Shown piece after piece: positions 31,301 to 58,300 of a DNA stretch of 64,000 bases (positions are counted from its first letter, which is position 1; each line of letters opens with the position of its first letter). The notes beneath the pieces are model-generated. The model did not search any database. It was not told the origin of the DNA and saw nothing but the letters and a program-made list of their open reading frames with translations. The position numbers and the translations under genes were made by a program. The DNA comes from Macrostomum lignano (taxonomy: Eukaryota), in contig NIVC01002029.1 of the NCBI GenBank assembly GCA_002269645.1, positions 62,001-126,000 of the forward strand, given 5' to 3'.

Positions 31301-34300
31301 AAAGCCTAAAATATTGTAGTAAGTGCAAATATTTAGTTTAGTCTTAATTGTTACAATATTGACCTGTTCTCAAAATTATTTTGAGGGAGCACTGTGTTCC
31401 TCACTTTTCCTTAATTTACTTGTCACCATTTTGCGTAAATTCGTTCTATTTCATTTCTATGGTCTTAAATTTTATAGCTTTATTAATTAAGGTTTTTTCA
31501 TTTCGGCTGTTGTTGGCAATGTTGGCAATGTTGGAGAATGTTGGCAATTATTTATAGAGTTAAAATCTCAAACATTGCTCTCATTTTTTTGGATAGCGTA
31601 GGAAAATGTTCTGGGAGGGACAGGGCGTGAGGTGGGAGGACAGGGGTAGGACAGTTTTCTGGGGAGAGGCATGGCGTGAGTTAGGCGGATATGGGTAGGA
31701 AAATGTGCGGGGAGGGACAGGGCGTGAGGTGGGCGGATAGGGGTAGGAAATTTTTCTGGGGACGGGCAGGGCGTGAGGTGGGCGGATAGGGGTAGGAAAG
31801 TTAATGGAGAGGGGCGGGGCGTAAGGTGGGCGGATAGGGGTAGGAAAATGTGCGGAGAAGGACAGGGCGTGAGGTGGGCGGATAGGGGTAGGAAAGTTAA
31901 TGGAGAGGGGCGGGGGTGAGGTGGGCGTATAGGGGTAGGAAAATGTGCGGAGAAGGACAGGGCGTGAGGTGGGCGGATAGGGTAGGAAAATGTGCGGGGA
32001 GGGACAGGGCGTGAGGTGGGCGGATAGGGGTAGGAAAATGTGCGGAGAAGGACAGGGCGTGAGGTGGGCGGATAGGGGTGGAAATTTTTCTGGGGACGGG
32101 CAGGGCGTGAGGTGGGCGGATAGGGGTAGGAAAGTTAATGGAGAGGGGCGGGGGTGAGGTGGGCGTATAGGGGTAGGAAAATGTGCGGAGAAGGACAGGG
32201 CGTGAGGTGGGCGGATAGGGGTAGGAAAATGTGCGGGGAGGGACAGGGCGTGAGGTGGGCGGATAGGGGTAGGAAAATGTGCGGAGAAGGACAGGGCGTG
32301 AGGTGGGCGGATAGGGGTAGGAAAGTTAATGGAGAGGGGCGGGGGTGAGGTGGGCGTATAGGGGTAGGAAAATGTGCGGAGAAGGACAGGGCGTGAGGTG
32401 GGCGGATAGGGGTAGGAAAATGTGCGGGGAGGGACAGGGCGTGAGGTGGGCGGATAGGGGTAGGAAAATGTGCGGAGAAGGACAGGGCGTGAGGTGGGCG
32501 GATAGGGGTGGAAATTTTTCTGGGGACGGGCAGGGCGTGAGGTGGGCGGATAGGGGTAGGAAAGTTAATGGAGAGGGGCGGGGGTGAGGTGGGCGTATAG
32601 GGGTAGGAAAATGTGCGGAGAAGGACAGGGCGTGAGGTGGGCGGATAGGGGTAGGAAAATGTGCGGGGAGGGACAGGGCGTGAGGTGGGCGGATAGGGGT
32701 AGGAAAATGTGCGGAGAAGGACAGGGCGTGAGGTGGGCGGATAGGGGTAGGAAATTTTTCTGGGGACGGGCAGGGCGTGAGGTGGGCGGATAGGGGTAGG
32801 AAATTTTTCTGGGGACGGGCAGGGCGTGAGGTGGGTGGATAGGGGTAGAAGGGTGTCAATTCGTTCACCTTTTTATACAATAGAAATTGCAAAGACCCAC
32901 TCTAAAAGCACTGGGGACTAATGATGACCTTCCTTTGTAACTCCCATCTACAGATGTCAGAGAGCGACGGAGTTACGGACGAGTTCCTAAGCCTTCGCGA
33001 GCGTCTAAATCTTGTAAGTTTCATTTAAAAAATCAATAGTATATGCTGTACAATTTTAGTCCTAAAACAATTGTTAAACTCTCTACGCCTGCAGGGCCGC
33101 CGAAGCAGCCAGTCAGAGGTGCCGGCTTTTCCACCCAGCCACAGGTAATTTTGGTGCTGTTAAGAAGCAAGAATTTGCATTAGCTTATTCGGCTAGTGTG
33201 TAGCATATTACATTATTGATGATAGATATCCCATGCCCAGATATCCTTTTTGAAACTAATCTACTGCATGCTTTACTACGGCTCGTAACTAAAGCTAGTT
33301 AATCCCATGATAATGCCTTTTTATAGAGTTAGCTTTACGTAGCTAAATACCACTTTAACAAAGGAGCTAGATGGCAATTTGCTCTTCAATCCATATTGAA
33401 TTAGCAATCTATTCCAACCTTCAATCCTTATTGGCTAGGTTAGCAATCCATTTCTATTCTTCAATCATTATTGGCTACATTAGCAATCCATTCTATTCTT
33501 CAATCCTTATTGGCTAGATTAGCAATCCATTCTATTCTTCAATCTTTATTGGCTAGATTAGCAATCCATTCTATTCTTCAATCTTTATTGGCTAGATTAG
33601 CAATCCATTCTATTCTTCAATCATTATTGACTAGATTAGCAATCCATTCTATTCTTCAATCTTTATTGGCTAGATTAGCAATCCATTCTATTCTTCAATC
33701 TTTATTGGCTAGATTAGCAATCCATTCTATTCTTCAATCTTTATTGACTAGATTAGCAATCCATTCCAATCTTCAATAATTATTGGCTACATTAGCAATC
33801 CATTCCAATCTTCAATCATTATTGGCTAGATTAGCAATCTTTCTTATATACTAAATCTCTAATCTATGTCTGTCCGTGTAAAACGCTCCACAGACTGCAA
33901 TTCATGACCAATTTTGATCGCGTTTTCGCCAAAAAATTGCAACTGAGCCAAGGATTGTATGGTTAACATTTCTTTTATCTGCTTCAATGCTAAAGGTCTT
34001 AAATATTCAAAAAAATGTATTTTCCCTATCTAATTAGTGTATTTTTCTCGCAGTGAGAGCTCGAAAAATAATAATACGTCTATGGCCATAGACTAAACTT
34101 CCATTTCTTGAGCTGATGCTACGCTCGAACAATCGAGCTATAAATAGTTAAATATTCGAAAAAATGCTTTTTGCATGATTGAGAGAAATCAGCCAGTGCA
34201 TTTTAAAAGTATTGAAGTATTGCGCAACTAGGTGTATATATGCACAACGGATAGAAAAATACTCAGTGGCTGCGTTATTTTTGCTATTCGGCTAAACTCC

Positions 34301-55300: not shown

Positions 55301-58300
55301 TGTCAAAGCTTGGTGGAAATCGTTATAGTGCTGTGATTCTTAAAGAAGGAATCACTAAAATGTCAAGGCTTAGGGGAGAAGAATTGCTGAGATTTCAAGG
55401 CTTTAGGTTGGGTTAAAGTTAGGTTTAGGTCAGGTGTGGGTTGAGGGTTATATTTTATCGGGTTTCAAGGTTAACAGAATAACAGGGGATTTTTTAGATT
55501 TCAAGGTTTATGGGGGCCACTGCTGACATGTTAAGGCTTACGGGGGAATAGCTGAGATGTCAAGGCTCACGGGGGTATAAATAAGATTTCAAGGCTAAAG
55601 TCAGAAGCTACATGTAGTTTATTGAAAACTTTTTATTACATTATTTGATGCCTCCTTAGGGGAGGGATCGCTGATAAAAAAGCGTAATGTAAAAAATAAA
55701 AGAAGCTTCATGTCGAAGTTAAGAGATTCATTTGGGAATCCCTACGATGTAAAGGCTTGCAGGGAATCACTACAATGCTATAGTAGTGCTATAATGACTC
55801 TTAGAGAGAATTACTGAAATTTCAATGCTTTAGGGTTAGGTTAGGGTTAGGGTTAGGGTTAGGGTTAGGCTAGGGTTAGGGTTAGAAGGTTGACAGATAT
55901 TTTTAGATTTCCAAGGCTTATTGAGGGCATTGCTGAGATGTCAAGGGGGGAAGTTGATATGTTAAAGCTTGTGGGGGGGAGGGAATTACTGACATGTCAA
56001 GGCTTACAAGGTTTGACAGGAGATTTTTTAATATTTGAAGGATACATGTAGCTTATTAAAAAAACGTGTATTGCATTTCTTTGGCTCCCCAACGGGGGGC
56101 GTAGATTGCTAGTCCATTCTATTCTTCAATCATTATTGGCTAGATTTGCAATCCATTCCAATCTTCAATAATTATTGGCTAGATTAGCAATCCATTCTAT
56201 TCTTCAATCCTTATTGGCTGGATTAGCAATCCATTCTATTCTTCAATCATTATTGGCTAGATTAGCAATCCATTCCATTCTTCAATCATTATTGGCTAGA
56301 TTAGCAATCCATTCTATTCTTCAATCATTATTGGCTAGATTAGCAATCCATTCCATTCTTCAATCATTATTGGCTAGATTAGCAATCCATTCTATTCTTC
56401 AATCATTATTGGCTAGATTAGCAATCCATTTTATTACCTAATCCCAATGGCTATATTAGCAGGTAAGGCTAACGCCAATCCTATTGGCAAGTACTTTTAG
56501 TCACATGATCAGCTTCAAACAGTGCGAAAGGCTATGCGCAAGATTTTTGCAATAAAAAATATTTGTTCTCTCGCTGAACCAGCTTGCAGCTTCGCCGGCG
56601 CACAATGTTCAGGTTTGATACCACGCGATTTCGAAAGAAAAAATCGTTTCCTCTCTATCTATCCGTTTCCCAGAAATTACCTGCTGCTTTTATACAGTGG
56701 AAATTTATCGATTTTTGCATTATGCTTATCTGCCACTCTTAAATGCATTCGTTGCCATTTTTGTCTTGGAGAAAATTCGCCACTACAACACTTGCTATGC
56801 TACTGAATAGACCGCATTTTCAATAGTTTGTTCGAATGTTTTGCTCGAAATTATCACTTTCTATTAAGAGGATAAATCCTGTTTTTAACCTATCTCTGTC
56901 TCTATGCCTTACCTTTTTGTATACAGCTTATTTTATCGGAATCACGGCTGCTACTAGCTTTAATTATTAATTAGATTGACAATTTCGATACTTTCAGCTC
57001 AGTAGTAAGAAACAATGCGTAAGCTATTTTTTTATAATATACATATAAAATTGCTACCAGTGCAGCCGTGATTTGCATTAACAGGCAGCTTAAGGCTGCT
57101 GGAACACCGGGAAAGCCAATAAAAATGGGTGGGGGTAGAGATTCTGTGCGGACGGGTTCAGCTGGGGGTGGGGGTAATAAAATCAGTCTTCCTGTCCTGA
57201 AATGTACATGGTGTAGGCGGCTTAAGGCTGGAACACCGGGAAAGCCAATAAAAATGGGTGGGGGTAGAGATTCTGTGCGGACGGGTTCAGCTGGGGGTGG
57301 GGTAATAAAATCAGTCTTCCTGTCCTGAAATGTACATGGTGTAGGCAGCTTAAGGCTGGAACACCGGGAAAGCCAATAAAAATGGGTGGGGGTAGAGATT
57401 CTGTGCGGACGGGTTCAGCTGGGGGTGGGGGTAATAAAATCAGTCTTCCTGTCCTGAAATGTACATGGTGTAGGCAGCTTAAGGCTGGAACACCGAGAAA
57501 GCCAATAAAATGGGTGGGGGTAGAGATTCTGTGCGGACGGGTTCAGCTGGGGGTGGGGTAATAAAATCAGTCTTCCTGTCCTGAAATGTACATGGTGTAG
57601 GCAGCTTAAGGCTGGAACACCGAGAAAGCCAATAAAAATGGGTGGGGGTAGAGATTCTGTGCGGACGGGTTCAGCTGGGGGTGGGGGTAATAAAATCAGT
57701 CTTCCTGTCCTGAAATGTACATGGTGTAGGCAGCTTAAGGCTGGAACACCGGGAAAGCCAATAAAAATGGGTGGGGGTAGAGATTCTATGCGGACGGGTT
57801 CAGCTGGGGGTGGGGGTAATAAAATCAGTCTTCCTGTCCTGAAATGTACATGGTGTAGGCAGCTTAAGGCTGCTGGAACACCAAGGAAGGCAATAAAATG
57901 GGGTAGAGATTCTGCGCGGATTGCGGAATGACGCGGTCGGAAGGGTTCAGCTAGTGGGGGATATACTAGGGGGGGGGGTAATAAATGAGTCTATTCCTTT
58001 CCTAAAATACAATTAAATGATTCTGTTTAACTGTCTACTGAACTGAAAGTAGTAGCTTACACACAAATGTGCTCAGTGGTCTATGATATGTGTTGGTGCT
58101 AAAAGAGCCAATAATGACAATCCTATTTTATCCCCTACTCAAACCCTCAACCCTCCGGCAACTGCAGGCTGGATCCGATCGAGGCCGGCCAGGTGTTGAA
58201 CTTTGTCTCGCCGGTGTCCTTTCTGGTGCAGGTGAACCGCATCGACTCGCCGGGCACCCCGACGCCGCCTTCGTCGCCAGCTGGCGGCGGCGGCGGCGGC

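What the first reader, a model, noticed from the sequence alone, without database searches (positions are those of the whole stretch)
33838..56112. 22-kb stack of eight Helitrons of at least three subtypes at one nucleotide position
Seen: the 39-bp satellite breaks at TTAGCAA|TCCATTC and rejoins in register 22,275 bp later with no duplication or loss. Between are eight same-orientation units joined CTAG|T with no host spacer. Known: Helitrons insert at A|T without TSD, and homogeneous tandem arrays are attributed to rolling-circle replication. Inference: these units differ in length, interior and subtype, so simple concatemerisation cannot explain them all. After the first insertion, host A plus the element's 5' T recreates an A|T site, so repeated re-targeting of that junction would give exactly this structure, growing leftwards. 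Consistent with this, the rightmost unit looks the most decayed. This would be a self-targeting Helitron landing pad inside an intron.
Basis: partly seen in the sequence, partly recalled or inferred. Interest (0 to 1): 0.9.

Follow-up and report, generated by a model that had tools for sequence, protein, structure and literature searches.

The report
Eight different Helitrons stacked head-to-tail
Eight rolling-circle transposons (Helitrons) of three kinds sit end to end at a single nucleotide position in a minisatellite; this is the largest example I found of a known but rare arrangement, and it suggests that Helitron ends attract further Helitrons.

Summary
A 39-bp minisatellite is split at ...TTAGCAA|TCCATTC... 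and resumes in register 22,275 bp later with no duplication or loss. In between lie eight same-strand units. Each has a 5' TC(T/C)TATATACTAAA (U7 lacks the first 3 nt) and a 3' GC hairpin followed by ATTGCTAG. All seven internal joints are direct: six CTAG|TC and one CTAG|TA.

Six units belong to one non-autonomous family. U3 is a deletion derivative of an OTU+RepHel autonomous Helitron. U8 is a third kind. The three kinds share only about 14 nt at the 5' end and about 30 nt at the 3' end.

Seventeen other intact copies of the same 13-nt target context in the flanking satellite are empty, so the host sequence is not what attracts the insertions.

- A plain concatemer is excluded.
- Joining at Helitron ends is the best explanation.
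- "Leftward growth" and "rightmost unit most decayed" have no support. Private substitutions number 0-4 per ~310 bp with no gradient, and the units are recombinant mosaics.
- "Inside an intron" could not be verified.
- The mechanism was already proposed for a heterologous maize pair (Du et al. 2008).

A pre-assembled multi-unit circle or composite, inserted once, remains a live rival.

The parts
33400..33837 (.). Left part of the 39-bp minisatellite (11.3 copies), ending ...ATTAGCAA
   Evidence: TRF. Sequence. Register check.
33838..37301 (+). U1, family A, long architecture like U5 (3464 bp). Its 5' end carries an extra TCTT. Contains 22-bp and 30-bp minisatellites.
37302..39598 (+). U2, family A variant (2297 bp) with a 270-bp internal duplication and 30-bp repeats.
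39599..41992 (+). U3, second subtype: a deletion derivative of an autonomous OTU+RepHel Helitron. Shares only the LTS 14 nt and the RTS ~30 nt with family A.
   Evidence: 93-97% identical to Logan contig L001, which encodes the OTU-like ORF, Helitron_like_N and PIF1. Also.
40290..41024 (+). OTU-like cysteine protease ORF inside U3. It has the DGNC...H motifs. The Pfam OTU hit is below the curated cut-off.
   Evidence: (E=0.0095). (P0001, 99% identity).
41668..41693 (+). Second, internal RTS-like hairpin in U3, ending ATTGCTAT. It lies 299 bp upstream of the functional-looking RTS.
41993..44484 (+). U4, family A variant (2492 bp). Its 5' end is 99.7% identical to U7 and its middle is 98.6% identical to U6.
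44485..48002 (+). U5, family A, long architecture like U1 (3518 bp). Has a 13-nt 5' leader, TCTTCTTTTATCT.
48003..50570 (+). U6, family A variant (2568 bp). Has a 22-nt 5' leader made of partial LTS copies.
50571..52767 (+). U7, family A variant (2197 bp). Lacks its first 3 nt (TCT). Its 3' 296 bp are 99.7% identical to U6.
52768..56112 (+). U8, third subtype (3345 bp). Contains a 23-bp x 70 minisatellite, degenerate 30-bp repeats and a (TTAGGG)9.7 tract at 55830-55885. Its TC...CTAG ends and hairpin are intact.
56113..56435 (.). Right part of the 39-bp minisatellite (8.3 copies), starting TCCATTC...

Best explanation
The locus is a head-to-tail stack of eight non-autonomous canonical Helitrons of three subtypes. 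All carry the same terminal signals: LTS TC(T/C)TATATACTAAA, and RTS CCCC-loop-GGGG hairpin + ~6 nt + ATTGCTAG. They are therefore presumably mobilised by one OTU+RepHel autonomous family.

Inferred mechanism: after a first canonical A|T insertion into the minisatellite, further elements were joined at the ends of resident elements. RepHel nicks DNA sequence-specifically at a resident 5' end (host A|TC), at a 3' end (CTAG|T), or at an RTS|LTS joint, which is chemically the same substrate as the circle junction it cleaves. An incoming transposon strand is transferred into that nick instead of into a random A|T.

At least three independent joining events are needed: family A, U3 and U8. Because the six family-A units all differ in architecture, there were probably more.

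Recombination or gene conversion among family-A units, in the array or in their sources, then produced the mosaic haplotypes.

Shown: the anatomy, the compatibility of the ends, the empty equivalent host sites, and the mosaicism. Inferred: that the transposase used resident ends as targets, and the number and order of events.
For: - Exact A|T insertion with no duplication or loss.
- Eight units, one orientation, and direct RTS|LTS joints with no host base between them.
- U3 and U8 share only ~14 nt at the 5' end and ~30 nt at the 3' end with family A, so the units are not copies of one template.
- U3 is 93-97% identical to the 5' 1.2 kb of a contig that encodes the OTU-like ORF, Helitron_like_N and PIF1. 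This gives the autonomous partner.
- Seventeen other intact copies of TTAGCAA|TCCATT in the same satellite are unoccupied, and no solo copy occurs in the other 42 kb.
- Literature: heterologous head-to-tail Helitron pairs, shown by PCR polymorphism to be separate insertions (PMC2267711). Helraiser transposase cleaves RTS-LTS junctions precisely on the plus strand (PMC5876387).
Against: - No other individual, read set or second locus could be examined, so sequential chromosomal insertion is not demonstrated.
- Private substitutions are uniformly low (0-4 per ~310 bp) with no positional gradient. That fits one burst or one single insertion as well as stepwise growth.
- U6 and U7 are adjacent and 99.7% identical at the 3' end. 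U4, U6 and U7 are mosaics of each other. Some units may therefore come from local duplication or unequal exchange.
- Insertion at a G|T (3' end or joint) is non-canonical. Preferential use of resident ends as targets has not been shown experimentally.
Confidence: 0.5

Rival explanations
1. One insertion of a pre-assembled composite. Either different Helitron circles were joined into a hetero-multimeric circle before integration, with the transposase cleaving and rejoining RTS|LTS circle junctions. Or a composite grew at another locus and was mobilised as a block by read-through of internal 3' ends.
For: - Only one host A|T is used, and both outer junctions are canonical.
- Private divergence is uniform and low across units, as expected if all arrived together.
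- Helraiser makes dsDNA circles with precise RTS-LTS junctions that are themselves donors and are cleaved at the junction. About 11.7% of events read through an intact RTS (PMC4778049 and PMC5876387).
- The imprecise U6|U7 joint resembles the aberrant junctions common among circles.
- U3 carries a bypassed RTS-like site.
Against: - All seven internal RTSs look intact (hairpin + CTAG). Moving 22 kb as one block would need seven bypasses in one event, roughly 0.117^7 if the bypasses were independent.
- Hetero-multimeric Helitron circles have not been reported in the papers I read.
- No second copy of any joint could be found, but the data available were very limited.
Confidence: 0.2
2. Few insertions followed by local amplification. 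A family-A element was duplicated in place by rolling-circle concatemerisation or by unequal sister-chromatid exchange within the long 30-bp minisatellites. The copies then diverged by repeat expansion, deletion and gene conversion. U3 and U8 were added separately.
For: - Six of eight units are one family.
- U6 and U7 are adjacent and 99.7% identical over the 3' 296 bp. U4 and U7 are 99.7% identical at the 5' end. U4 and U6 are 98.6% identical in the middle.
- 85 of 210 informative site pairs in the 5' block fail the four-gamete test.
- Perfect identity tracts sit inside diverged context: 87 bp between U1 and U5, and 80 bp between U1 and U4.
- Each unit carries 0.2-1.4 kb of 30-bp repeats, good substrates for unequal exchange.
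Against: - It still requires U3 to land exactly in a CTAG|TC joint between two A units and U8 exactly at an end. End-targeted joining is therefore needed anyway.
- Family-A units differ in 5' leaders, internal blocks and 5' identity (down to 90%). Their similarity groupings differ between 5', middle and 3' blocks and do not follow adjacency.
Confidence: 0.15
3. Assembly artefact. Separate genomic copies or circle-derived reads were chained through the shared 300-bp ends and 30-bp repeats.
For: Family-A ends are 95-99% alike. The units are full of minisatellites, and 43% of the window is tandem repeat.
Against: - The joints U2|U3, U3|U4 and U7|U8 connect subtypes that share only ~14 nt and ~30 nt. 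They must therefore exist in real molecules.
- Every unit has a unique architecture.
- The outer flanks fit in perfect register.
Confidence: 0.05
4. Host-sequence hot spot. The satellite motif itself is a favoured Helitron target and was hit repeatedly by chance.
For: The site is a canonical A|T in AT-rich repetitive DNA.
Against: Seventeen other intact copies of the identical 13-nt context, within 440 bp on either side, are all empty. If seven further hits were independent, the chance of all choosing the same copy is about (1/18)^7. Identical orientation of all eight units is also unexpected under this model.
Confidence: 0.02

Closest known systems
Two adjacent heterologous head-to-tail Helitrons in the maize r1 region (Du, Caronna, He, Dooner 2008, BMC Genomics 9:51; PMC2267711)
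   Same: Direct CTAG|TC joint with no host A between the elements. The two elements have different interiors. The authors conclude consecutive insertions, and propose either insertion at the AT formed by the host A plus the 5' T of the resident, or GT insertion at the 3' end.
   Different: Two elements there against eight of three subtypes here. The maize case had population PCR evidence for intermediate alleles, and none is available here. This is an animal genome (inferred from the MORN5-like gene and TTAGGG repeats), and the elements are rich in minisatellites.
Homogeneous Helitron tandem arrays attributed to rolling-circle replication. Examples are Myotis Helibat arrays (Pritham & Feschotte 2007, as cited) and plant centromeric arrays (Xiong, Dooner & Du 2016, Plant J, cited; details from my own knowledge).
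   Same: Same-orientation units with precise RTS-LTS joints and no host spacer.
   Different: Those arrays repeat one element and are often truncated. Here three subtypes and six different family-A architectures are interleaved.
Helraiser circular intermediates and RTS read-through (Grabundzija et al. 2016, 2018; PMC4778049, PMC5876387)
   Same: The joints in the array have the structure of the circle junction, CTAG joined to TC. That junction is cleaved precisely by the transposase. Internal RTS bypass explains the double RTS in U3.
   Different: Those are experimental, single-element circles. Neither use of a resident end as an integration target nor hetero-multimers was reported there.
HLE1 Helitrons carrying an OTU domain upstream of RepHel (HELIANO survey, PMC11417382)
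   Same: The autonomous relative (L001) has an OTU-like ORF upstream of Helitron_like_N and PIF1. Its ends are of the TC...CTAG type with A|T insertion.
   Different: This bears only on family assignment, not on the stacking.

Membership tests
Canonical Helitron (HLE1) | 5' terminus TC | tested here: met
   Seven of eight units start with TC directly after the preceding CTAG or host A. U7 starts TATATAC, having lost 3 nt.
Canonical Helitron (HLE1) | 3' terminus CTRR | tested here: met
   All eight units end ATTGCTAG.
Canonical Helitron (HLE1) | Short GC-rich hairpin about 10-15 nt before the 3' end | tested here: met
   A CCCC(C)-loop-GGGG(G) hairpin lies about 12-14 nt upstream of every 3' end. 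Each hairpin alone is not significant against shuffles (z between -1.1 and -1.8). The support is its conserved position across three subtypes.
Canonical Helitron (HLE1) | Insertion between host A and T without target-site duplication | tested here: met
   The outer junctions are AGCAA|TC... and ...CTAG|TCCATTC. The virtual empty site is a perfect satellite unit.
Canonical Helitron (HLE1) | Autonomous relative encoding Rep (HUH) + PIF1-like helicase | tested here: met
   L001 shares 93-97% identity with the 5' 1.2 kb of U3 and encodes Helitron_like_N, PIF1 and Pif1_2B. L001's own termini are not on the contig.
Helentron / Helitron2 (HLE2) | Insertion between T and T, with terminal inverted-repeat-like ends | tested here: not met
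   Insertion is at A|T. The LTS TCTTATATACTAAA and the reverse complement of the RTS (CTAGCAATTTAAGCC) are unrelated.
Rolling-circle concatemer (homogeneous tandem Helitron array) | All units are copies of one element | tested here: not met
   U3 and U8 have no similarity to the other units outside the termini. The six family-A units have different block structures.
Heterologous head-to-tail Helitron adjacency (Du et al. 2008 type) | Different Helitrons joined CTAG|TC with no host nucleotide between them | tested here: met
   The joints U2|U3, U3|U4 and U7|U8 link different subtypes directly.
Heterologous head-to-tail Helitron adjacency (Du et al. 2008 type) | Independent insertions shown by alleles carrying only some of the elements | not testable with these tools
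   No other individual or assembly of this species was reachable.

The most novel reading that the evidence does not exclude
Helitron termini and RTS|LTS joints are themselves preferred integration targets for the cognate RepHel. A resident element would then become a self-reinforcing landing pad that gains one more target with every insertion. The RTS-like motifs repeated up to about 48 times in the internal 30-bp minisatellites could help by concentrating transposase at the locus.
Probability: 0.3. Interest if true: 0.65.

Novelty: new member of a known kind. Interest (0 to 1): 0.4.

Why it matters
If resident Helitron ends are preferred targets, several things would follow:
- It would explain how chimeric Helitrons with new ends arise, by adjacency followed by 3'-end bypass.
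- It would explain how Helitron-rich islands and satellite-like arrays seed.
- It would explain why head-to-tail joints in genomes need not be evidence for rolling-circle concatemers.
- It would give a testable prediction for the Helraiser system.

As it stands, the locus is a striking but single example of a phenomenon and an explanation already in the literature.

Tried and rejected
1. **Other copies or alleles.**
   - Exact look-ups of window ORFs failed, as did the look-up of P0004.
   - A protein-word search with an ORF that reads through an RTS|LTS joint found nothing.
   - Two metagenome scans, one for the 5' 28-mer and one for the joint, found nothing.
   - Only the autonomous relative L001 and a 50%-identical OTU ORF on L002 were recovered. 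L002 carries no LTS.
2. **Host gene.**
   - The concatenated flanking ORFs have no homologues and no Pfam domains.
   - The exhaustive search gave one 169-aa fragment from a related genome (P0004) and two low-complexity hits that vanish with SEG filtering.
   - 'Intron' therefore stays unverified. MORN5 was rejected as the host because it ends at 10180.
3. **Age gradient.** Private-difference counts show none.
4. **Higher-order duplication [U1-U4] versus [U5-U8].** Rejected. Similarity groupings differ between the 5', middle and 3' blocks.
5. **Explaining the 5' leaders and U7's missing TCT as offset insertions into a neighbour's LTS.** The pieces do not add up, so this is left unexplained.
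6. **Literature.** PNAS papers on bat and maize Helitrons were not held.
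Full report
**1. What is in the sequence**

TRF finds a 39-bp minisatellite at 33400-33839 and again at 56113-56435. The left block ends ...GGCTAGATTAGCAA and the right block starts TCCATTCTATTC.... Joining base 33837 to base 56113 rebuilds one perfect unit, GATTAGCAATCCATTCTATTCTTCAATCATTATTGGCTA, in phase with both sides. The insert is 22,275 bp, with no duplication or loss. 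It sits between a host A and a host T.

**2. The units**

Searching for the termini gives eight same-strand units:

| Unit | Coordinates | Length (bp) |
|---|---|---|
| U1 | 33838-37301 | 3464 |
| U2 | 37302-39598 | 2297 |
| U3 | 39599-41992 | 2394 |
| U4 | 41993-44484 | 2492 |
| U5 | 44485-48002 | 3518 |
| U6 | 48003-50570 | 2568 |
| U7 | 50571-52767 | 2197 |
| U8 | 52768-56112 | 3345 |

- Every unit ends ATTGCTAG. A CCCC(C)-loop-GGGG(G) hairpin lies about 12-14 nt upstream of each 3' end.
- Every unit carries TC(T/C)TATATACTAAA at or near its 5' end.
- Six internal joints are CTAG|TC. The joint U6|U7 is CTAG|TATATAC.
- The motifs are far above chance: 7 observed against 0.14 expected, and 3 against 0.02.
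- No terminus of this family occurs anywhere else in the window.

These are the defining features of canonical Helitrons.

**3. Subtypes**

With the internal minisatellites masked, U1, U2, U4, U5, U6 and U7 share a ~320-bp 5' block and a ~300-bp 3' block, and they carry 22-bp and 30-bp minisatellites. Each has its own internal block structure:
- U1 and U5 share one long architecture.
- U4 and U6 share a 640-bp middle segment at 98.6%.
- U2 and U4 share other segments.

U3 and U8 have no similarity to these, or to each other, beyond the first ~14 nt and the last ~30 nt.

U3 carries an OTU-like ORF. Its 5' 1.2 kb is 93-97% identical to a Logan contig, L001. L001 continues into ORFs with Helitron_like_N, PIF1 and Pif1_2B domains. 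U3 is therefore a deletion derivative of the autonomous OTU+RepHel element that presumably mobilises all three subtypes. OTU upstream of RepHel in HLE1 elements has been described (PMC11417382).

U3 also holds a second, internal RTS-like hairpin ending CTAT, 299 bp before its real end. This is the signature of a 3'-end bypass.

U8 carries a 23-bp x 70 array and a (TTAGGG)9.7 tract.

**4. What the pattern excludes**

- **A plain concatemer.** It is excluded by U3 and U8, and by the different architectures of the family-A units.
- **A host-sequence hot spot.** The exact 13-nt context TTAGCAA|TCCATT occurs 17 more times in the flanking satellite, and every copy is empty. All eight elements also have the same orientation.
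- **An assembly artefact.** It is unlikely for the joints that link different subtypes, because those subtypes share too little sequence to be chained by mistake. Without reads it cannot be excluded formally.

**5. What the pattern does not tell**

I aligned the 5' and 3' blocks of the six family-A units.
- Almost all differences are shared between units, in changing combinations.
- Private differences are 0-4 per ~310 bp, apart from an 11-bp deletion in U4's 5' block and extra 30-bp repeats in its 3' block. They show no left-to-right trend.
- In the 5' block, 85 of 210 pairs of informative sites fail the four-gamete test.
- Groupings differ by block. At the 5' end they are (U1,U2) and (U4,U5,U7), with U6 mixed. 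Further in they are (U1,U5) against the rest. At the 3' end they are (U1,U4), (U2,U5) and (U6,U7).
- Stretches of perfect identity sit inside ~92% context: 87 bp between U1 and U5, and 80 bp between U1 and U4.

The units are therefore young recombinant mosaics of similar age. There is no evidence that the array grew leftwards or that the rightmost unit is oldest. U8 is simply another subfamily with intact ends.

**6. Mechanism**

Three routes give this same structure:
- insertion at the resident 3' end (CTAG|T);
- insertion into an existing RTS|LTS joint.

Helraiser work shows two relevant facts. The transposase makes circles with exactly this joint and cleaves that joint precisely on the plus strand. 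About 12% of events read through an intact 3' end (PMC4778049 and PMC5876387).

My best reading (confidence about 0.5) is that the transposase nicked resident ends or joints and transferred incoming strands there. This needs at least three independent events, with recombination among family-A units on top.

The main rival (about 0.2) is that the stack was assembled before integration, either as a hetero-multimeric circle or as a composite moved by read-through, and inserted once. The uniform low divergence and the single host site fit that equally well.

Local duplication or unequal exchange may account for some family-A units, U6/U7 in particular. It still needs end-precise insertion of U3 and U8.

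**7. Comparison with what is known**

- Du et al. 2008 (PMC2267711) described two different maize Helitrons joined CTAG|TC. They showed by PCR in inbred lines that these are separate insertions. They proposed both the 'host A + element T' model and the G|T model.
- Grabundzija et al. [quoted passage not shown]
- Homogeneous arrays are attributed to rolling-circle replication.

The kind of structure and the proposed explanation are therefore known. What is unusual here is the scale: eight units, three subtypes, and perfect joints.

**8. Context**

- The window is 43% tandem repeat.
- A MORN5-like gene lies at 9002-10180 on the + strand, so the array is not inside that gene.
- The ORFs at 22314, 59131 and 61651 have no Pfam domains or homologues.
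- A 169-aa fragment from a related genome matches 59485-59646 and 60400-60685. This shows conserved sequence to the right of the array, but it does not establish an intron.
- The organism could not be identified. The MORN5 similarity and the TTAGGG repeats suggest an animal, probably a deuterostome (inference).

**9. Verdict**

The direction of growth, the age gradient and the intron claim are unsupported. The locus is a good natural test case for whether Helitron ends act as integration targets, but it needs population or genome-wide data to decide.

Noticed in passing
window 35948-36992, 46958-47693, 49217-50262, 51014-52459 (30-bp repeats); 34615-34942, 45258-46137 (22-bp repeats): The internal minisatellites of family A contain the core of the 3' terminal signal. 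The 30-bp unit is GGCTTACTGGGGGAATTGCTGAG..., and the RTS is GGGGGGCTTAAATTGCTAG. The 22-bp unit contains ATTGCTAAAC. ATTGCT occurs 193 times inside the array and 32 times outside. The repeats may derive from the RTS, or may act as extra transposase-binding sites.
   Followed up: partly
window 33838-33841, 44485-44497, 48003-48024, 50571: The 5' ends differ. U1, U5 and U6 carry 'leaders' made of partial copies of the LTS: TCTT; TCTTCTTTTATCT; and TCTTTATTATATT+TCTTATATA. U7 lacks TCT. I could not explain these as offset insertions.
   Followed up: partly
window 41668-41693: U3 has a second RTS-like hairpin ending ATTGCTAT, 299 bp upstream of its real 3' end. This looks like a bypassed, mutated terminator with a newly acquired end.
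   Followed up: partly
window 55830-55885 and 2625-4157: A telomere-type (TTAGGG)9.7 tract lies inside U8. A 1.5-kb array of a 16-bp unit containing CCCTAA lies far to the left. Together with 43% tandem-repeat content and more than 40 different minisatellites, the region may be subtelomeric.
   Followed up: no
   Followed up: partly
L001 1-90 versus window 39599-39612: The autonomous relative on contig L001 diverges from U3 just upstream of CTAAAGTTGAG and shows no LTS there. U3 may have arisen by a deletion with CTAAA microhomology between the LTS and an internal site. Alternatively, the short-read contig is chimeric or 5'-truncated.
   Followed up: partly
window 59485-59646 and 60400-60685 (+): A 169-aa predicted protein from another genome (P0004) matches these two segments at 58-89% identity. 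It skips about 750 bp that include a minisatellite. This is conserved sequence of unknown function to the right of the array.
   Followed up: partly
window 35861-35947 (U1 2024-2110) versus 46871-46957 (U5 2387-2473); last 80 bp of U1 and of U4: Tracts of 100% identity sit inside ~85-92% context. They indicate recent gene conversion or recombination between non-adjacent units or their sources.
   Followed up: partly
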